DNA of 64,000 nt from Macrostomum lignano (lineage: Eukaryota): the NCBI GenBank assembly GCA_002269645.1, contig NIVC01001007.1, forward strand, positions 124,001 to 188,000, written 5' to 3'. This document shows, one piece after another, positions 2,810-64,000 of the stretch. The first letter of the stretch is position 1; every line of letters starts with the position of its first letter. Position numbers and translations under genes: made by a program. The notes under the pieces are model-generated. The model made no database searches and was not told the origin of the DNA. It saw only the letters and a program-made list of their open reading frames with translations.

Positions 2810-4051
2810 ATGCCGACGCCAATTGCTTGGCCTGAAGGCGTCCTCGGGCTCTGCTTGGCCGGGGTCAGCGGCGCCATCAACCTGGCTCTGGCCGGAGCTG
2901 CTCTGTTCGGCGGCTGCAGGCGCTACGGCGACCTGCTGCACGGCCTGTGCTTCCACGCCGGCCTGGTCGGCTGTCTCCACGCCGGCTTGGTGACATCGAT
3001 TCACTCGCTGCTGCTGTCGGTTGATCGGCACCTGGACCAGCCGGTGTGGTGGGTCTGCTGCAAGATCTACTTGTTCTGCCAGATGTTCCTGCCTGCTCTG
3101 TACCTGTACCTGACAGCTGGTGTCATTGTCTGCTTTCGAAGCGTCCGGTATCCGCCAAGGCGATGCGGCCAGAGCTGCACCAGGCTGGGCTACCTCTCCG
3201 CGCACTGTCTGCCTTGGGCGGCCTGCAGCCTGGGACTGCTACCGGTCCTACTCATGCACAAGGAGTCCACGGAGTCGGCGCTGCGCAACGAGGGTCGCTG
3301 CCTGATGCTCGAGCGCTGGGCCTGGCTGGCGCCGCTGTCCGTCCTGCTGGCAGCGCCGCTGCTGGCCCAGCTGGCCCTGACCTGCCTGCTGTGTGCCTAC
3401 AAGCCCTACAGAGACGAGGACAGTCGGGGCGACGGCGGATCAGTCGATTCGTCCGACACCGAGGACTTCAACGAAGTCTACCACTATCGGGCTGGAAATT
3501 ACGCTGACCACGACGAGTTGAACAACGAAAATCAGCGAAGTCCATCGCGCTATCGAAGACGCGACAAACAGAGAAGATGTCGCCGACAGAATCAGCAACA
3601 GTCGCTGCGCATGGCGCGAATTCAAGGCAACGGATTCGGTGGAGCTATGGTGACCGCCGCTTCAATCGAAAGCAGCAGAGGTTATTACAGGTGCGAGCCG
3701 CGACTGCTGCTCGGTCGTCCGATACGAACTGCTCGAACTCTGCTGCTAATGCTGAGCTTTCTGCAAGCGGTCACCCAGCTGCCCCACTGTGCAACCGCGA
3801 TGCTGCAGACGGTGCTGCGCAATCTGCCCTCCAGACAGCCGATCGAAGAGTCTGCGTTGAACGCTGTCTACTGGCTTCATCTAACCTACTTTCCACTCGC
3901 TGGCCTGCTGCTCATCGCCTTCACACTGCAGCTGCGTCGGGCATTTCGCATCACGGAGCTGGAAATTGGCGAGGAGTTGGCCAGACAGAGGCTGCAGAGA
4001 ACCGCGGCTGGCGAGGTGCTGCAGACGACCAGCATGTTGACATCGTTGTAG
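2810..4051 (+). CDS. Intronless, divergent rhodopsin-like (class A) 7TM orphan receptor, 413 aa
   Basis: Seven hydrophobic segments; Cys at the top of TM3 (VCCKIY) and in ECL2 (GRCLM); Pro in TM4 (LPW), TM5 and TM6 (TQLP); long charged ICL3. Canonical DRY and NPxxY are not recognisable. Confidence 0.75.
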   Translation: MPTPIAWPEGVLGLCLAGVSGAINLALAGAALFGGCRRYGDLLHGLCFHAGLVGCLHAGLVTSIHSLLLSVDRHLDQPVWWVCCKIYLFCQMFLPALYLYLTAGVIVCFRSVRYPPRRCGQSCTRLGYLSAHCLPWAACSLGLLPVLLMHKESTESALRNEGRCLMLERWAWLAPLSVLLAAPLLAQLALTCLLCAYKPYRDEDSRGDGGSVDSSDTEDFNEVYHYRAGNYADHDELNNENQRSPSRYRRRDKQRRCRRQNQQQSLRMARIQGNGFGGAMVTAASIESSRGYYRCEPRLLLGRPIRTARTLLLMLSFLQAVTQLPHCATAMLQTVLRNLPSRQPIEESALNAVYWLHLTYFPLAGLLLIAFTLQLRRAFRITELEIGEELARQRLQRTAAGEVLQTTSMLTSL

Positions 4052-15151: not shown

Positions 15152-18100
15152 TCAGTCGTCTCCGAAGATATCCTTCACCAAGTGGTTGTACTTGCGATCC
15201 TGCAGCTGCTCCTTCGCGGCGGTCACCACCTTGCCGCTTTCATCTTCATCAGAGGAAGCCGACGAAGATGTTGACGAAGAAGACGAGCTCGAGGCCGCCT
15301 CGGCAGCGGCAGTTGTTTTATTAAGAAGCTGCTGCTGCTGCTGCTGCTGGGTCCTGTGCATCACGGATGCCGTGGCAACTTTCACTGGCGGCGGCAAGTA
15401 CGACGGCGCCGAAGCTTTCGCGGCCTTAGAGGCGCCCGAACTCGAATTCGAAGATGCCGCCGCTGCCGCTGCCGCCGCTCGGCCGCTGACAAGCTGCGAG
15501 AATCCGCGCGGTTTCTGAGGAGACGCGGCGACAGGCAGCGAGGCACCGCCAGATCGAGAAGCCAGCTGCTGCGGCAGCTTCTTCGGACGATGCAGCATGA
15601 ATTGGAGAATGTCGTCCTCCCGAGGACCGCCCGACGCCGTTGGCTGTACAGGCGTTCGCCTGGCAACCTGCTTGGCAACGGTCACTTGGCTATGTTTTGC
15701 TGGTCCCAACGTTGTCATTGCTGAATTGTTGCTATTAGTAGAACCTTGCTGCTGTTGCTGTCTGGATTTAGCGCGCTCCTGTTCGATCCGAGCCTTCATC
15801 TCTTGCCACTGCTGGCGCTGGGCAAGGTCGCGCGGCGGCAGCGGCGGCGGCATGGAAGGCCGAGACTTCTTGCTGGAGGGCGATGGTAGATGCTGCTGAT
15901 GTTCAACAGACGTGGGACTGCGGCTTCGATGACGTTTGCGTTGATCTGACGCCGTTGGAGGGTGCTGGTGACTGCGCGATTGCGGGTTCGGGTTATGCTG
16001 ATGCCTGCAAATGAAAATGTATTGAAATTGAATACATGCATAAATCATACTAAAAACAACCGTATACCATTAATTTACTTTGACCATAGACAACTGGAAC
16101 ATGAAGGATTTTTATCAAAGTACCTAGCATGAGGTTGCTGCTGCTGCTGCTGCTGTAGTGTCGGTGGCGGCTTAGACTCTTGAGAAGTCATCATCTCGGC
16201 TTGGCCCTTTTTAAGCTTCTCAAGTTTGCGCAATCGTCTACGCTCTCGTTCAGCTCTCTCCGCCGCCTCCGTCGCGGCTTCTTTCTCTTCTAAACGTTGC
16301 CGCTTCTCGCGTTTACGTCGGCGGCGCTCCTCATCGGCGTCCTTCGAGACGGTAGCTAATGATGGCGATGATTTTTGAGAAACAGCTGCCCAAGAGACCT
16401 TAGTCTTCGACCCAGACTCTTTAGCGTGTTTAGAAACGGATGAAACAGTTACTTTAGTAACGGTTTTTACAGCGGCATCGTTAACAGCCGATGTAGCGGC
16501 TACCTTAGAAACTGGTGCTGCAGTGTCCTTAGAAACTGATTTCAAAGCGTCCTTAGTAACGGATATTACAGTTTCTTTGGAAACTGATGCTAAAGCGTCC
16601 TGAGCAACGGATGTTACAGGTTCCTTAGTAACCGGCGCTACAGCACCCTTAGCAACGGATGTTACATGTTCCTGAGAAACCGACGCTACAGCGCCCTTAG
16701 CAACGGATGTTACATGCTCCTTAGAAACCGACGCTACAGCGCCCTTAGCAACGGATGTTACATGTTCCTTAGAAACCGACGCTACAGCGCCCTTAGCAAC
16801 GGATGGCCGGGATGGGACAGGTTCCTTAGAACCTGACGCTACAACAGCCTTAGCAACAGATCCTAACGCCTCATCAGGAACAGAAATCACCTCGGAGTTT
16901 GGTCCAGAATCGGGTACTTCTTCTATTCGACTCCGTTTCGTCTCTGGTTGTTCTTCAACACTACTAACAGTAGCTGATTTGGCTGTTGAATCAGTTGTCG
17001 TGACTCGAGCAGCAGTCGACGATAGCGAGACAACGGAAACTGAAGCAATTTTTGGTGCTCTAACTGAGCAGCTGGTGGTTGTCACGGAGCGCACAGCGGT
17101 GGTACTGTTGCCCGAAGAACTGGTGAATTTAAACTGCGATATCCGAGCAGGCAACTGCACTTTTGTAGTGGCTGAAGACGTCGATGTTTTGGTATTATTA
17201 GACTGCGGCAGTCTGACAATGACTACTGAAGGCGAAGAAGTTACGGTGCCAGAAGACTGAGATGGAGGCTGCTGTTGCTGTTGTTTCGACAGCTGAACTG
17301 CGTTAGTCTTCTGTTCAAAAATAATTTTAGTTGGCTGTGCAGACGAAGGATTCAAAGCTGAAGGAGAAGGCGGTTCTATCTGCTGTTGTTGTTGCAATTC
17401 AGCAGCTCGGGCGGCTCTCAAGGCGGCGGACTCGGCTTCAACTCTACGCCGCTCCTCGGGCGTCAGAGTGTGCATGAGGTAACAGGGCACTGTGTTGCCG
17501 CTTTTAAACAATACCTTGCGAGGCTGCGGGGAAGGCGACGGAGCCTCCTTCGCCAGCTCTTCAACCCGGTCCTGCTGCTCAGGCTCCAATCTGAACTCGT
17601 CTATAACCTCGACACCAACGTCGCCAGCCTCATCGTCGGTGCACTCGTCGGCTTCGTCATCTGAGCTGACTGTTGTATCGGATTTTAAATATTCAATTTC
17701 TAAGGGGCCTTCGTCGAATACTTCAACGGAATTGATGCCCTCCTCGGCTGAGACTGAGGCTGTAGAATCGTTTTCGCCTCGTTTCTTATTACTAGCAGCA
17801 GTTGTTATAGTCTTTGTTACAACCGCGACTGGTTCAGTCTTTGTTGCGAGCGTTGCCACAGCAGTGATAGCAGTTGCATTAGCATTCGAACAAAAAATTG
17901 AACTCGCCGCTGATGCAACAGTTTGCAGCTCTGGCTGTTGCTGCGAATCTGCTGCGGAAGATTCCAATTTAACTGTCAATTGCTCCGCTTGAGGTTCTAT
18001 CTTCCGCAGTTTCTCTTGCTGCTTTTGCTGCTGCGACTTCTTTCGATTATTATTAGTCCGTCCGCCTGCTCTGACAGCAGCGCTTGTCGAACCTGCCGAC

Positions 18101-21100
18101 TCTTCGGCGATAAGTTTCGCGGGTTTTTGTCTCAGTCGTCGAGTTGGCAACGCTTCGTTCGGTTGCTGCTCGGCAATACCAGCTTCAGCCTCCTCTGCCG
18201 CTTCATCCGAACTGTTGTCTTTAACGCACACACTGCACTCCCAGCCGTAGAGTTTAGTCTTCTTCGGCACTCGGGTCAGAGGCGGATCCAAGCAGCCGAT
18301 GTGATAATAAAGCTGACAGGCGTCGCATTGCACCTGAGGGAATGAGTTTATGTGAGTACTCTATACTAATATATATATATTTACATATGGATTCCAAAGT
18401 TAATCCCGATGCTTATATTGATGTCAACTCTAGTCCCGAGCACAGAATTTACACAGAATGCCGAATCGCAACAAAACTGTGTTTACCCGACGTTTTAAGG
18501 TTCAAGTTTTGTGACTTTATATAGAAACTGACTCAAGTCTTGTGACTGTCTATAGAAACCGACTCCAAGTCTTGTGACTTTCTATAGAAACCGATTCAAG
18601 TCTTGTGACTTTCTATAGAAACCGACTCCAAGTCTTGTGACTTTCTATAGAAACCGACTCAAGTCTTGTGACTGTCTATAGAAACCGACTCCAAGTCTTG
18701 TGACTTTCTATAGAAACCGATTCAAGTCTTGTGACTTTCTATAGAAACCGACTCAAGTCTTGTGAATTTCTATAGAAACCGACTCAAGTCTTGTGACTTT
18801 CTATAGAAACCGACTTTAAGTCTTGTGACTTCTATAGAAACTGATCCAAGTCGTGTGACTTTCTATAGAAACCGACTCAAGTCTTGTGAATTTCTATAGA
18901 AACTGACTCAAGTCTTGTGACTTTCTATAGAAACTGACTCAAGTCTTGTGACTTTCTATAGAAACTGATCCAAGTCGTGTGAATTTCTATAGAAACCGAC
19001 TCAAGTCTTGTGACTTTCTATAGAAACCGACTCAAGTCTTGTGACTTTCTATAGAAAACGACTCATCTTTGATTGACCCATTTGAGCATAGAGACTCGAT
19101 GGATGTGTTAGAATTCGTAACTGCTCTTGGTTGATACTACTGGCCACAGTTTAACAACAAAAGTAGTGCGCAAATTTAGTAGTCCAGATGTCAATCATTA
19201 CTGTAATCCAAAATCACTCGCAAAATTCCCCATCCCGTTTTCGCAGCAACCAACCCACCATCAAGTGCTGATCCTTTTTAGCTTTGCAAACTGTGCACTC
19301 GTTCAGGCGCCTCAAAGCCGCCGCTTTGGCAGCCAAATCGCCAACTTTAACTGGCGCCCCTCCGGCATTCGCAGCCGCTGTTATCGTCGACGAATCTTCA
19401 TCGCCCTCGCCAATCGGATGATCGACGTTAGTGCCAGCGTCGCCAGCTGACGCCGACACGCCTTCTAACGCGTTGCTCAATCTTAGCGGCATAGCAACCG
19501 AAGCCGAGCCGGTTGCTAAGCAACCTAACAAAGCGTCCCAAACAGCCGCGAATTCAGAACGACAAGTTTTTAAACGATTTTGACAGGTTTGATAAGCCGT
19601 CTCGGCGTTGGAATAGCGCAGCGTCTCAGCTGATTGGCGCTCGATGAGCTCCGCCTCCTGCAGGTGAGAGAGTCAACGATTTGATTAGAGCTAAACTTAT
19701 CGGTTGTCAATCAAATTTCAGGTGACTAGATTTATTAAAATACCAGGTAAACTACACACTGTATCAGGTGTCAGTGCAAGTTTATGTAAACTACATTTAC
19801 TGTATAAGGTGTCAGTGCAACTTCAGGTAAACTACATTTACTGTAGCAACGTGAAACCTCAGTGCAACTTCAGGTAAACTAAAGTTACTGTATCAGGTGT
19901 CAGTGCAACTTCAGGTAAACTAAATTTACTCTATCAGGTGTCAGTGCAACTTCAGGGTAAACTACATTTACTATATCAGGTGTCAGTGCAACTTCAGGTA
20001 AACTACATTTACTGTATCAGGTGTCAGTGCAACCTCAGGTAAACTACATTTACTGTATCAGGTGTCAGTGCAACTTCAGGTAAACTAAATTTACTCTATC
20101 AGGTGTCAGTGCAACTTCAGGTAAACTAAATTTACTCTATCAGGTGTCAGTGCAACTTCAGGTAAACTACATTTACTGTATCAGGTGTCAGTGCAACTTC
20201 AGGTAAACTACATTTACTGTATCAGGCGTCAGTGCAACTTTAGGTAAACTACATTTACTGTATCAGGCGTCAGTGCAACTTTAGGTAAACTACATTTACT
20301 GTATCAGGTGTCAGTGCAACTTCAGTTACACTACATTTACTGTATCAAGTGTCAGTGCAACTTTAGGTAAACTACATTTACTGTATCAGGTGTCAGTGCA
20401 ACTTTAGGTAAACTACATTTACTGTATCAGGTGTCAGTGCAACTTCAGGTAAACTACATTTACTGTATCAGGCGTCAGTGCAACTTTAGGTAAACTACGT
20501 TTACTGTATCAGGTGTCAGTGCAACTTCAGTTACACTACATTTACTATATCAGGTGTCAGTGCAACTTTAGGTAAACTACATTTACTGTATCAGGCGTCA
20601 GTGCAACTTTAGGTAAACTACATTTACTGTATCAGGTGTCAGTGCAACTTCAGTTACACTACATTTACTGTCTCAAGTGTCAGTGCAACTTCAGTTACAC
20701 TACATTTACTATATCAGGTGTCAGTGCAACTTTAGGTAAACTACATTTACTGTATCAGGTGTCAGTGCAACTTTAGGTAAACTACATTTACTGTATCAGG
20801 TGTCAGTGCAACTTCAGGTAAACTAAATTTACTCTATCAGGTGTCAGTGCAACTTTAGGTAAACTACATTTACTGTATCAGGTGTCAGTGCAACTTTAGG
20901 TAAACTACATTTACTGTATCAGGTGTCAGTGCAACTTCAGTTACACTACATTTACTATATCAGGTGTCAGTGCAACTTTAGGTAAACTACATTTACTGTA
21001 TCAGGTGTCAGTGCAACTTCAGGTAAACTACATTTACTGTATCAGGTGTCAGTGCAACTTTAGGTAAACTACATTTACTGTATCAGGTGTCAGTGCAACT

Positions 21101-61241: not shown

Positions 61242-62141
61242 CTGTCAGAATAGGGGATTTCTTTAGATTAGATAGGGAACTCTCACCTGACAGAATAGGG
61301 GATTTCATTAGATTAGATAGGGAACTCTCACCTGCCAGAATAGGGGATTTCTTTAGATTAGATAGGGAGCTCTCACCTGATAGAATAGGGGATTTCGTTA
61401 GATTAGATAGGGAACTCTCACCTGACAGAATAGGAAGTTCCGTTAGATTAGATAGGGAACTCTCACCTGATAGAATAGGGGGTTCCGTTAGATTAGATAG
61501 GGAACTCTCACCTGATAGAATAGGGGATTTCGTTAGATTAGATAGGGAACTCTCACCTGCCAGAATAGGGGATTTCTTTAGATTAGATAGGGAACTCTCA
61601 CCTGTCAAAATTGGGGATTTCGTTAGATTAGATAGGGAGCTCTCACCTGACAGAATAGGGGATTTCTTTAGATTAGATAGGGAACTCTCACCTGTCAAAA
61701 TTGGGGATTTCGTTAGATTAGATAGGGAGCTCTCACCTGACAGAATAGGGGATTTCTTTAGATTAGATAGGGAACTCTCACCTGACAGAATAGGGGATTT
61801 CTTTAGATTAGATAGGGAGCTCTCACCTGATAGAATAGGGGATTTCTTTAGATTAGATAGGGAACTCTCACCTGATAGAATAGGGGGTTCCGTTAGATTA
61901 GATAGAGAACTCTCACCTGATAGAATAGGGGGTTCCGTTAGATTAGATAGAGAACTCTCACCTGATAGAATAGGGGGTTCCATTACATTAGATAGGGAAC
62001 TCTCACTTGACAGAATAGGGGGTTCCATTAGATTAGATAGGGAACTCTCACCTGATAGAATAGGGGGTTCCATTAGATTAGATAGGGAACTCTCACTTGA
62101 CAGAATAGGGGGTTCCATTAGATTAGATAGGGAACTCTCAC
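61242..62141 (-). repeat. Exactly 20 x 45-nt tandem units, each shaped like a complete mini-intron (GTGAGAGTTCCCTATCTAATCTAAAGAAATCCCCTATTCTGTCAG)
   Basis: First GT at 62141, last AG at 61242, 900 nt with no indels; ends 24 nt before the receptor ATG at 61218. Confidence 0.95.
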
Positions 62142-62537
62142 CTGTCAGAGATTCAGTTTTAGAATAAATCACTTTAATTTATAGCTGTCTCTAAATGAGC
62201 TGACTCTTTCGCTTTATTAGAAAGATAATCTTGGCAAATCTGCAACTTAATTAACACGATTCACCTGCGTGAAAGCGTGAAATATACAAGCTACAGCTGT
62301 ATATATAGGGCGTATTTGCAAAATTAACCAACTAAAAAATGATAAATTTTTTTCTTCATCCTGATTGGCTGCCTATATGCTGGCATCCTCGAGCATTTAG
62401 CAATCTCCGCATGATTAAACGACTAAAAAATTCTTCGAATAAGAAAAGATTTCTCTAAATCGAGATTGACAATTAATATAATGAGCATTCTAAGAACAGT
62501 TAGCGATTGAAGGTTTTCAAGTCACAGGCGAGGTCTC

Positions 62538-62822
62538 AGCATCCTGATACAGCATCCTGATACAGCATCCTGATACAGCATCCTGATACAGCATCCTGAT
62601 ACAGCATCCTGATACAGCATCCTGATACAGCATCCTGATACAGCATCCTGATACAGCATCCTGATACAGCATCCTGATACAGCATCCTGATACAGCATCC
62701 TGATACAGCATCCTGATACAGCATCCTGATACAGCATCCTGATACAGCATCCTGATACAGCATCCTGATACAGCATCCTGATACAGCATCCTGATACAGC
62801 ATACTGATACAGCATACTGATA
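62538..62822. repeat. Perfect 13-bp minisatellite (ATCCTGATACAGC), ~22 copies
   Basis: Directly visible; source of the MLYQDAVSGCCIR ORFs. Confidence 0.97.
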
Positions 62823-64000
62823 CCCACAGTTCGATACCTCAGGTTAATTAGGTCTCAGCATTCTTATACTCAGTTTGTACAAAGCTTGAATAAGTTTTCA
62901 AAATGTAGTAGGGGTTCAGGCTTGGCTTCATTTCTAGTTTGGATAGCTTTGCAACAACAAATTGGTTCAAGAGAGATTGAGCATGTCAGATTAACCTGTC
63001 AAATTGCTGCTATGAGTCCCATGCAGAATCCCTGGTAGAAAAGCTTAAACTCTATTGCACCATCGGAAATCTTGCTTTGGCCCCGACACGAACGAACGCG
63101 TTCGTGCCAGTGATGAAGACAAAGTCATCTGTCTAGCCACGATAATTGCACCCTTGAAGAAGAAGTTTGAAAGAAAAAAATGTTTTAAGATTGAAACTGT
63201 CGTGAAAATTATTTTTGATTTTCTTTTTTTTTAAAGAACTAATGATATTCCCTGTCTGAAATTGGTAAAATCTTGTAATTAGAAGGATATCTTGTAATTA
63301 GAAGGATAATAAAGCTTTCTAGAGTGCAGATGATCCTTTTCGGTGCAACGTTCCGGTGATATATACCTTTCCGATATCCGTGTCTTGTGTTATCCGCATC
63401 CACCCAGATAGTACAAGTGCTTTCTGATCTCCCCCGGATATTTCTAGCACACGCGGCTGCTGTTCTGGGCGCCTTTTCTTGTGCTTGTGGCGACTTCAGC
63501 TCATTCCTCCATCCGATCAATTTCTGAATTCGCTTCATCTTCATTCATTAACTATAGTACGAGCGTCTTATCTCTCTCCGAAACAAATTAATCTAATTTG
63601 TTGTCGTGGCCTGAATTGTAAACCTTTTTTAGCAGTCGTTCGACAATTCCATTTTCTGTTCTCGATCTTCGCTGTTTAAAAATGCTCCGTTTTTAATTGG
63701 GGGGATTGTATCTTCGCTCTTAAAGTATTCGTGCGAAATCCCTTATTCGAAAAAAATGTTCTATTTTGGGGGGTGTCGCTACTTTCCTACCTAGGCGCTA
63801 GTTTATTTACACTTCTTATCTGCTGTTTGGCTCTCTCCGTTCACCTTGTCTCGACCAATATAGTTCAAACCTCTCTCTTTATTGATCTCTTACCCTTTCC
63901 TTCTTCTGATTGGTCGGTCTCTCATTCTTCTCTAGCCTCTCATTCTCTCACCTGTCGCGTACTCCACCCTCCTTACTTTATGTCAGCCAACCCCCTCAGT

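What the first reader, a model, noticed from the sequence alone, without database searches (positions are those of the whole stretch)
61242..62141. Tandem array of 20 complete 45-nt mini-introns (AG|GT ratchet points) at the 5' end of a melatonin-like receptor
Seen: on the gene strand every unit starts GTGAGA, contains CTAAT words and ends ..CCCCTATTCTG(T/A/G)CAG or ..ATCAG. The array starts exactly at CAG|GTGAGA (62141) and ends exactly at CAG|GCGAAA (61242), so it is 900 nt = 20 x 45. Seventeen of the 19 internal junctions are AG|GT and two are AA|GT. Known: adjacent AG|GT sites with zero-length exons are the signature of recursive splicing, normally isolated points in very long introns. Inference: a short 5'UTR intron was amplified as a whole in perfect register. 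This creates a ladder of equivalent donors and acceptors that could be removed in one step, recursively, or partly, which would give length-tunable 5' ends and discrete 45n-nt lariats.
Basis: partly seen in the sequence, partly recalled or inferred. Interest (0 to 1): 0.85.

Follow-up and report, generated by a model that had tools for sequence, protein, structure and literature searches.

The report
Start-codon repeat array resembling mini-introns
A 45-base stretch spanning the start codon of a flatworm-type receptor gene has been copied about 20 times in tandem, and every extra copy looks like a tiny intron, so the array is probably spliced out, which would make it a new example of a known way that introns arise from repeats; no RNA data could be checked.

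Summary
There are 20 head-to-tail 45-nt units at 61242-62141 on the gene (-) strand. All 20 start GTGAGA, and the 19 internal junctions are 17 AG|GT and 2 AA|GT. The interpretation needs three corrections.

1. The array is not delimited by intron ends. Its periodicity starts 8 nt earlier, at 62149. It continues into a diverged 21st copy (61249-61205; 28/45 identical, P<2e-5) that contains the receptor's own start codon (ATG 61218). The units are therefore copies of exonic 5'UTR/start-codon sequence, not an amplified stand-alone intron.

2. It has five in-phase ATGs, so retained units would add 15-aa repeats to the N-terminus rather than lengthen the UTR.

3. Tandem repeats with a dual-specific AGGT site at each unit boundary are already described (human UBC and VCX3A; intron birth by tandem duplication).

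The intron-like anatomy is nonetheless real and non-trivial. Only this one of 27 arrays has it, and it arises in about 2.5e-5 of shuffles. Copy 21 lacks it. The closest relatives are flatworm proteins, and microintrons are common in flatworms.

Best reading (about 0.5): a repeat-born intron that is removed and restores the ancestral mRNA. No transcript data were available.

The parts
61242..62141 (-). Each has a GTGAGAG donor-like start, CTAAT/CTAA[CTA] words, a C/T-rich tract and (18 of 20) a CAG end. In frame 2 they read as the 15-aa repeat GESSLSNL[KTM][KE][SP]PIL[STA].
62142..62149 (-). TCTGACAG: the first 8 nt of copy 1 in the array's natural register. This is the true 5' edge of the periodicity and also the end of the putative leader exon (…ACAG|GTGAGA).
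61205..61249 (-). Copy 21, diverged (28/45 identical to the other copies): TCTGACAG GCGAAACTCTAGCATATAGTGGAATGGAACTGCTTGA. It contains the last acceptor (AG at 61243-61242), the 23-nt leader and the receptor start codon, and it has no donor, pyrimidine tract or CTRAY word.
61216..61218 (-). Receptor start codon (MELLDNGTT…). It is homologous in register to the ATG at unit columns 24-26, and its context is GGAATGG.
   Evidence: relatives start M-E-x-D-N-x-T
62116..62118 (-). First ATG downstream of the ATG-free leader. It lies in unit 1 and is in phase with 61218. Other in-phase ATGs are at 62073, 62028, 61983 and 61308. If the array is retained, translation could start here.
62142..62357 (-). 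216-nt ATG-free stretch directly upstream of the array: the candidate 5' leader exon. It carries an in-frame TAA at 62181-62179, so the open frame cannot extend further upstream.
   Evidence: P≈0.01
62301..62369 (-). Candidate core promoter: GCCAATCAG (62369-62361) and TATATAT (62307-62301). A second TATAAAT lies at 62183-62177. These are consensus matches only.
60806..61218 (-). Receptor coding exon 1 (N-tail, TM1-TM3, ending …IALNR).
60069..60488 (-). Receptor exon 2 (YIYILH… to …VYFDK). The preceding intron is 317 nt (AG|GTGCGT…TTTGCAG|G).
58892..59150 (-). Receptor exon 3 (TM7, NSCVNCIIYGILNKNFRR, stop). The preceding intron is 918 nt and contains a 75-nt array.

Best explanation
A 45-nt segment of the receptor gene, made of the last 31 nt of the 5' leader, the ATG and the next 11 nt, was tandemly duplicated upstream of itself. 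The downstream copy (copy 21, 61249-61205) kept its job as the real translation start. The upstream copies acquired a full set of intron signals: AG|GC became AG|GT through a CpG-to-TpG change; the donor is GTGAGA; each copy has two CTAAY words and a C/T-rich tract before CAG. These copies then expanded and homogenised by 45- and 90-nt slippage or unequal exchange to 20 copies.

Every copy boundary is a dual-specific AG|GT site. Splicing from the first donor (62141) to the last acceptor (61242), in one step or stepwise with each step regenerating …ACAG|GTGAGA, removes exactly 20 x 45 nt and restores the ancestral single-copy mRNA, which starts at ATG 61218. The array would then be a repeat-born 5'-leader intron, tolerated because it is spliced out. 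Any copies that escape splicing stay in frame and would add 15-aa repeats to the extracellular N-terminus.

Shown: the array, its true extent, its homology to the start-codon segment, the open phase, and the non-random splice-like anatomy. Inferred: the direction of change, transcription from upstream, and all splicing.
For: Array anatomy.

Copy 21 homology, in register and spanning the ATG: 21/35 with P=2e-5, next register 16. A free local alignment recovers the same register, P≈0.01-0.02. As a 45-mer it is 28/45, matched by 0 of 50,000 shuffles, against flanks at 11-12/45.

ATG 61218 is the family's native start: relatives begin MEADNETSTT / MSPQDNLLMGNGT with short N-tails.

Splice-like anatomy is non-random: 1 of 54 array-strands has it, and 2.5e-5 of shuffles. 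Copy 21 has none of the three features. Reaching all three by 19 random substitutions has P≈8e-6.

The GTGAG donor equals the M. lignano cis-donor motif GT[G/A]AG (PMC8629364).

The closest relatives are flatworm proteins. Flatworm microintrons under 75 bp are common, 5'-clustered and have near-consensus sites (PMC6530080).

The 216 nt upstream are ATG-free (P≈0.01), with TATA and CCAAT matches further up, as expected for a leader exon that ends at the first donor.

Identical unit pairs 1=3, 9=11, 10=12, 5=6 and 14=17 show DNA-level 45/90-nt expansion.

Precedents: a tandem duplication makes a functional intron (PMC3265369); dual-specific-site arrays in UBC and VCX3A, with the argument that such expansions are tolerated because they are spliced out (PMC10809524).
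Against: There is no transcript, lariat or ortholog evidence of any kind.

The four introns I could infer in this window are 120, 317, 918 and about 3100 nt. None is a microintron.

The array's acceptors (TGTCAG, TATCAG, TGACAG) have a purine at -5. Two of the three real acceptors read here have TTTGCAG, and two units have CAA instead of CAG.

The frame is open and in phase, which a purely intronic array does not need. The rough chance of that is about 0.15: about 1/3 for a period divisible by 3, times about 0.45 for the in-phase frame being open.

The promoter and TSS rest only on consensus matches. The TATAAAT at 62183 would put a TSS only about 10 nt before the first donor, too close for a normal first exon.

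The splice-likeness criteria were chosen after seeing the unit.

The taxon is inferred from a 52% best hit.
Confidence: 0.5

Rival explanations
1. Coding minisatellite. The array is retained in the mRNA and translated from ATG 62118, giving the receptor a roughly 300-aa Ser/Pro/Leu/Lys-rich extracellular N-terminal repeat (20 x 15 aa). The splice-like motifs are by-products of the codons.
For: ORF 60784-62172 is uninterrupted through the array and in phase with TM1. The period is 45 = 15 codons, with no indels. The first ATG after a 216-nt ATG-free leader is in unit 1 and in phase. Eight units carry an N-L-T sequon. A coding 48-nt minisatellite exists in a PHD-finger exon of the same window (16546-16805).
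Against: Codon-usage score is +0.11 per codon. Real exons score 0.37±0.20 and the coding 48-mer scores 0.73, while non-genic open arrays reach 0.2-0.37. The opposite-strand frame is open too. Among 13 variable columns only 5 are synonymous, so there is no clear purifying selection. There is no signal peptide or hydrophobic start, and most units have a net positive charge, which is unfavourable for an N-tail that must cross the membrane. All relatives have short N-tails, and no protein anywhere carries this repeat. This reading does not explain the 2.5e-5 / 8e-6 splice-like anatomy.
Confidence: 0.15
2. Neutral minisatellite with no RNA-level role. This would be one more of the many arrays in a genome region that is one-third tandem repeat. 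It would lie in the promoter or 5' flank (TSS downstream) or be carried passively in the 5'UTR. Its intron-like look and open frame would be coincidence picked out by a reader scanning many arrays.
For: There are 44 arrays covering 33% of the window; 5 of 27 contain AGGT and 11 of 27 have periods divisible by 3. ORFs commonly run through arrays here, for example the ADAM exon ORF running into the 40-mer array. The register of a tandem repeat is arbitrary. All my feature tests are post hoc.
Against: All three splice features together occur only in this array and in 2.5e-5 of shuffles. They sit on the gene strand, directly between an ATG-free leader and the start codon. If the array is transcribed and unspliced it cannot be 'just UTR', because five in-phase ATGs with no stop would start translation. 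Only 23 nt separate the array from the ATG, leaving no room for a promoter downstream of it.
Confidence: 0.2
3. An ancestral, already functional 45-nt 5'UTR microintron was amplified in register, for instance by slippage between the CAGG words at its two ends. The resemblance of the downstream exon to the unit would be secondary.
For: The 8-nt TCTGACAG precedes both the first unit and the post-array exon. Microintrons of this size are typical of flatworm 5' gene ends. The units have complete signals.
Against: Copy 21 matches the units over columns 1-30, far beyond a splice-site word, and includes the start codon, which must be exonic. A stand-alone intron would not be homologous to the exon that follows it unless it was itself born from a duplication of that exon, which is the best explanation above.
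Confidence: 0.1
4. Spliced-leader trans-splicing. The region upstream of 61242 is an outron. The last acceptor (CAG|GCGAAA, 23 nt before the ATG), or internal acceptors, receive the SL.
For: About 20-30% of Macrostomum genes are SL trans-spliced. An acceptor a few tens of nt before the ATG is the usual geometry.
Against: Trans-splicing requires an acceptor without an upstream donor in cis (Conrad et al. 1993, as cited in PMC8629364). Here 20 strong donors precede it. The acceptors do not fit the [T/C]TNCAG trans-acceptor motif. The species and its SL are unknown.
Confidence: 0.05

Closest known systems
Tandem arrays of dual-specific AGGT splice sites in repeat genes (human UBC, VCX3A; Duan et al. 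2024, PMC10809524) and 'introns from tandem arrays' (Zhuo et al. 2007 PNAS, known to me only through citations; the paper itself was not held)
   Same: There is an AGGT at every unit boundary of a head-to-tail array. The unit length is divisible by 3, so units can be removed as introns or kept as exons without a frameshift. A ladder of isoforms differing by whole units is predicted. Expansion is tolerated because it can be spliced out.
   Different: UBC units are 228-nt functional coding monomers with weak sites. Here the units are 45 nt, microintron-sized, each with its own donor, branch-like words and pyrimidine tract. They derive from the 5'UTR/start-codon segment and have no evident coding value. 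The setting is a flatworm-type genome. Use of the sites is not shown.
Intron birth by tandem duplication of an AGGT-containing exonic segment (Rogers model; Hellsten et al. 2011, PMC3265369; potato RdRp case, PMC4974935)
   Same: The candidate intron is a duplicate of the adjacent exon sequence (copy 21). Splicing between the repeated sites removes exactly the duplicated length and restores the original mRNA.
   Different: Here there are 20 copies instead of one. The retained copy has AGGC rather than AGGT, so the donor is derived (or was lost). The duplicates have diverged 38% from the retained copy and gained the extra signals.
Human F7 intron-7 37-bp VNTR that reiterates the 5' splice site (Borensztajn et al. 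2006, PMC1557585)
   Same: A minisatellite whose edge copy spans an exon boundary creates a row of identical splice sites. In F7 only the most upstream donor is used, which predicts one-step removal from 62141.
   Different: F7 repeats carry donors only and lie inside a larger intron. Here each unit also carries an acceptor, and the whole candidate intron is the array.
Zero-nucleotide-exon recursive splice sites (ratchet points) of long Drosophila and vertebrate introns (from my own knowledge: Burnette 2005, Duff 2015, Sibley 2015)
   Same: The motif is the same juxtaposed acceptor|donor: Yn-N-CAG|GTRAG. Splicing to the acceptor regenerates a donor.
   Different: Ratchet points are isolated, conserved sites in introns of tens of kb. 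These are 19 sites 45 nt apart in a 900-nt array, produced by repeat expansion.
Flatworm microintrons (PMC6530080)
   Same: Length under 75 nt, near-consensus GT…AG sites, 5'-proximal position and clustering.
   Different: Known microintrons are separated by exons. Here there are no exons between them, and none has been shown to be spliced.

Membership tests
Dual-specific-splice-site (AGGT) tandem-repeat intron | Head-to-tail repeat with AGGT once per unit on the gene strand | tested here: met
   17 of 19 internal junctions plus the 5' edge are AG|GT. TRF gives 45 nt x 20.2 copies.
Dual-specific-splice-site (AGGT) tandem-repeat intron | An observed intron whose length is a whole multiple of the unit, with both splice sites inside the repeat | not testable with these tools
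   No transcripts of this locus exist in any collection.
Dual-specific-splice-site (AGGT) tandem-repeat intron | Unit length divisible by 3, so removal or retention keeps the frame | tested here: met
   45 nt; the frame is open and in phase with the CDS.
Intron born by tandem duplication of exon sequence (Rogers model) | The intron sequence is a paralog of the adjacent exon sequence, in register | tested here: met
   Copy 21 is 28/45 identical (0 of 50,000 shuffles) while the flanks are 11-12/45. In the fixed register it is 21/35, P=2e-5.
Intron born by tandem duplication of exon sequence (Rogers model) | Excision between the repeated sites restores the pre-duplication mRNA | tested here: met
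   By sequence, joining …TCTGACAG (62142) to GCGAAAC… (61241) reproduces copy 21 exactly. Use in vivo was not testable.
Zero-nt-exon recursive splice site (ratchet point) | Juxtaposed pyrimidine tract-CAG|GTRAG motif | tested here: met
Zero-nt-exon recursive splice site (ratchet point) | Location within a very long intron, subdividing it | tested here: not met
   The whole array is 900 nt, and the sites are 45 nt apart.
Zero-nt-exon recursive splice site (ratchet point) | Recursive intermediates or lariats, or a saw-tooth nascent RNA profile | not testable with these tools
   No RNA data.
Flatworm microintron | [quoted passage not shown] | tested here: met
   45 nt, GTGAG, CAG in 18 of 20 units. 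Motifs from PMC8629364; size class from PMC6530080.
Flatworm microintron | Flanked by exons and removed in vivo | not testable with these tools
   There are no exons between units and no RNA data. No other microintron was found in this window.
Coding protein tandem repeat | Open frame continuous with coding sequence on both sides | tested here: not met
   The frame is continuous only on the 3' side. Upstream it closes at TAA 62181-62179, with no ATG before unit 1.
Coding protein tandem repeat | Coding-like codon usage or purifying selection | tested here: inconclusive
   LLR is +0.11 per codon, between exons and non-genic arrays. Variation: 5 synonymous of 13 variable columns.
Coding protein tandem repeat | The repeat is present in homologous proteins | tested here: not met
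   No hit to the repeat in 5.8 billion proteins. Relatives have short N-tails. The extension of P0006 is a fused neighbouring paralog.
Rhodopsin-family GPCR ('melatonin-like') | 7tm_1 domain across TM1-TM7 | tested here: met
   Pfam PF00001 on exons 1 and 2. 8204 homologs at E≤0.001.
Rhodopsin-family GPCR ('melatonin-like') | Orthology to melatonin receptors | not tested
   Only an NRY motif at the end of TM3 was seen. The named relatives are generic.

The most novel reading that the evidence does not exclude
Each 45-nt copy is an autonomous microintron. The array would then be cleared by obligate stepwise 'ratchet' splicing with zero-length exons, releasing 45n-nt lariats. Copy number, or incomplete clearing, would set either receptor output or the number of 15-aa repeats on its N-terminus. 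That would make it a natural, densely packed recursive-splicing ladder and a caught-in-the-act case of intron birth and multiplication from a start-codon duplication.
Probability: 0.15. Interest if true: 0.7.

Novelty: new member of a known kind. Interest (0 to 1): 0.45.

Why it matters
If RNA data confirm splicing, three things follow. First, this locus would be an unusually clean natural example of intron creation by tandem duplication: the retained ancestral copy, with the start codon, sits next to 20 intronised copies, so both the before and after states can be read in one allele. Second, it would extend the 'dual-specific AGGT sites make repeat expansions harmless' idea from human genes to a flatworm-type genome that is very rich in minisatellites. 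Third, it would offer a compact 900-nt substrate for asking how a spliceosome chooses among 20 identical donors and 18 identical acceptors, and whether microintron-sized units are removed singly. If the array is not spliced, it is an ordinary minisatellite that happens to abut a start codon.

Tried and rejected
1. Transcript or ortholog evidence. A word-indexed protein search with the spliced receptor found a best hit of 35%. The same search with the repeat-containing ORF found nothing. An exhaustive HMMER search found a best hit of 52%. No contig is on record for P0006. The metagenome DNA scan for the unit found nothing. No near-identical sequence exists in any of these collections.

2. P0006 (693 aa, 7TM core at residues 370-651) looked like a relative with a long N-terminal extension. 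Its N-terminus is actually TM6-TM7 of a neighbouring paralog, so it is a fused gene model and was rejected as support for a coding repeat.

3. Degenerate copies upstream of 62149 are not significant (P≈0.1-0.6; 12/45).

4. A second resemblance between the unit's 3' half and CDS 61151-61139 (AACTCCCCGATTC) is out of register and not significant (P≈0.07-0.2). Dropped.

5. Codon-usage and synonymous/non-synonymous tests of the open frame were inconclusive.

6. A search for microintrons in the other genes of the window (PHD-finger, ADAM) found only introns of 120 nt or more.

7. Rfam and ARAGORN found nothing. The M. lignano SL sequence is absent from the window, which is uninformative.

8. The bacterial promoter/terminator scan was not used because it is inappropriate for a eukaryote.

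Full report
OBSERVATION

On the - strand, 61242-62141 is a perfect-period tandem array. TRF reports a 45-nt period, 20.2 copies, 92% matches and no indels over 61241-62149. Eighteen end in CAG and two in CAA. The 19 internal junctions are 17 AG|GT and 2 AA|GT, with CAG|GTGAGA at 62141 and CAG|GCGAAA at 61242. The unit is found nowhere else in the window. The description is accurate.

THE GENE

Downstream lies a rhodopsin-family receptor (Pfam 7tm_1) in three exons: 61218-60806, 60488-60069 and 59150-58892. It is 363 aa, with an NRY motif after TM3 and introns of 317 and 918 nt. An exhaustive HMMER search gives 8204 homologs. The closest named ones are Macrostomum lignano proteins (52% and 37% identity) and Schmidtea GCR150, so the window is probably from a free-living flatworm; this is an inference. 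Relatives have short N-tails that begin like this one: MEADNETSTT and MSPQDNLLMGNGT against MELLDNGTT. ATG 61218 is therefore the family's native start. I did not test the 'melatonin-like' label.

Frame 2 of the array has no stop in 900 nt and is in phase with exon 1. The ORF 60784-62172 (462 aa) reads GESSLSNL[KTM][KE][SP]PIL[STA] twenty times and then runs into TM1. Five in-phase ATGs lie in units 1-4 and 19. The first, at 62118, is the first ATG after a 216-nt ATG-free stretch (P≈0.01). If the array is in the mature mRNA it is therefore coding, not UTR.

The evidence that it is meant to be coding is weak:
- The opposite-strand frame is also open.
- Codon usage scores +0.11 per codon. Real exons score 0.37±0.20, a true coding 48-mer array in the PHD-finger exon scores 0.73, and non-genic open arrays reach 0.2-0.37.
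- Only 5 of 13 variable columns are synonymous.
- No protein in 5.8 billion carries the repeat.
- P0006, the one relative with a long N-extension, is a fused two-gene model.

The array does not stop at the supposed intron ends. The 8 nt before 62141 (TCTGACAG) belong to the repeat. The sequence after 61242 continues the repeat in the same register:
- 21 of the first 35 nt match units 1-4, including the exact 8-mer AATGGAAC that contains the receptor's start codon.
- P=2e-5 by shuffling, and the next-best register gives 16.
- Only 3 of 18,276 sampled window 35-mers reach this score, a count that includes the array's own.
- A free local alignment finds the same columns, 13-30 against 13-30.

In the natural register there are 21 copies, 62149-61205. 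Copies 1-20 are 39-45/45 identical to one another. Copy 21 is 28/45 identical, matched by 0 of 50,000 shuffles. The 45-mers on either side are 11-12/45. The units are therefore paralogs of the exonic 5'UTR/start-codon segment. 'A short 5'UTR intron amplified as a whole' is not what the sequence shows. Identical unit pairs (1=3, 9=11, 10=12, 5=6, 14=17) show expansion in 45- and 90-nt steps at the DNA level.

IS THE INTRON-LIKE ANATOMY MORE THAN CHANCE?

The background is demanding. There are 44 arrays covering 33% of the window; 5 of 27 sizeable arrays contain AGGT, and 11 of 27 have periods divisible by 3. The GT...AG register is an arbitrary cut of a cyclic unit. Even so, the combination of GTRAG donor, at least 70% pyrimidines before the AG, and a CTRAY word at branch distance occurs only in this array on either strand, and in 2.5e-5 of composition-matched shuffles.

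Copy 21, the retained ancestral-type copy, has none of the three features (GCGAAA, 53% pyrimidine, no CTRAY). Nineteen random substitutions from it give all three with P≈8e-6. One of the needed changes, AGGC to AGGT, is a CpG-to-TpG transition.

These tests are post hoc and the genome-wide base rate is unknown. Still, position strengthens the case: the array is on the gene strand, directly between an ATG-free leader and the start codon. I do not think chance is the best explanation.

CONTEXT FROM THE LITERATURE

- In M. lignano the dominant cis-donor motif is GT[G/A]AG and the acceptor is CAG; about 30% of genes are SL trans-spliced, with a [T/C]TNCAG acceptor (PMC8629364).
- Simple and tandem repeats make up 15% of that genome (PMC5730564).
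- In flatworms, including M. lignano, microintrons under 75 bp are frequent, cluster at 5' gene ends and have near-consensus sites (PMC6530080). A 45-nt intron is therefore plausible in this lineage. However, the four introns I could infer in this window are 120-3100 nt.
- A tandem duplication of AGGT-containing exon sequence creates a functional intron in one step (PMC3265369).
- The F7 intron-7 VNTR reiterates a donor, and only the most upstream one is used (PMC1557585).
- Human UBC and VCX3A carry a dual-specific AGGT site at every repeat boundary and give isoform ladders. Seventy-seven human introns are whole multiples of a surrounding repeat unit, and the authors argue that such expansions are tolerated because they are spliced out (PMC10809524).

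MECHANISM I COMMIT TO (ABOUT 0.5)

The start-codon segment was duplicated upstream of itself. The upstream copies became intron-like and multiplied. The pre-mRNA, started upstream (TATA-like 62307-62301, GCCAATCAG 62369-62361; consensus matches only), is spliced from 62141 to 61242. This happens in one step, as F7 would predict, or stepwise, since every partial excision recreates …ACAG|GTGAGA. Either way the ancestral mRNA is restored exactly. Escaped copies remain in frame.

RIVALS

- Constitutive coding N-terminal repeat: 0.15.
- Neutral minisatellite with a coincidental look: 0.2.
- SL trans-splicing outron: 0.05. This is disfavoured because 20 cis donors precede the acceptor.

VERDICT

The boundaries and the origin were misread, the open frame was missed, and the kind is already described. 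All splicing remains inference. Interest is moderate: if RNA confirms splicing, this is a clean, compact natural case of repeat-born intron multiplication.

Noticed in passing
window 16546-16805 (- strand, inside ORF 16075-18333): A 48-nt minisatellite (5.4 copies) lies inside a PHD-finger protein exon. It is read as a 16-aa repeat (VAKGAVASVSKEHVTS…), with coding sequence on both sides and a strongly coding codon score (0.73 per codon). It is a genuine coding minisatellite in the same window.
   Followed up: partly
whole window: One third of the window (44 arrays, 21,195 nt) is tandem repeat with periods of 4-119 nt. Arrays fill introns and intergenic space. Several unrelated arrays share GAGATTAG/GAGATTGG-type words (1375-1526, 45045-46027, 54920-56119), as does the + strand of the 45-mer (TTAGATTAGATAGG). 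A common origin or shared core motif was not tested.
   Followed up: no
window 60540-60782 (- strand, receptor intron 1): Most of the 317-nt intron is an insertion with a tRNA-like head (GGGGCTTGTGGGCTAGTGGTTAGAGCATCAGACTCGCGACTGAAAGGTCGGGAGTTCGATTCTCGACC), resembling a tRNA-derived SINE. ARAGORN and Rfam report nothing. Without the insertion the intron would be about 75 nt.
   Followed up: partly
window 58231-58844: A 10-nt array (GATTACCTAT on the gene strand, about 61 copies) starts about 48 nt after the receptor stop codon, so the 3'UTR or downstream flank is also a minisatellite. A 13-nt array x22 (62537-62823) lies just upstream of the candidate promoter, and a 75-nt array (59646-60035) fills intron 2.
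   Followed up: no
window 54943-56037 (+ strand): A 119-nt array (9.2 copies) is the only other array with an AG|GTRAG word (CACAG|GTGAGATTAG). It lacks a pyrimidine tract and branch word. Its relation to any + strand gene was not examined.
   Followed up: no
protein P0006 (UniRef100_A0A1I8JCR4, Macrostomum lignano): The closest relative is a fused gene model: TM6-TM7 of one receptor, about 300 aa of low-complexity read-through, then a full paralog. This suggests the receptor family sits in tandem gene pairs in Macrostomum and that the public model is wrong.
   Followed up: partly
window 43309-43869 and 43737-44086 (+ strand): The ORF of an ADAM-type (reprolysin/disintegrin) exon runs on into a 40-nt intronic array, giving spurious repeat 'protein' ([13 protein letters not shown]…). 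This shows that exon ORFs reading into adjacent arrays are common here and can mislead gene models.
   Followed up: partly
window 2810-4051 (+ strand): A 413-aa ORF with several hydrophobic segments and no Pfam hit. It may be another membrane protein or a divergent receptor. It was not examined.
   Followed up: no
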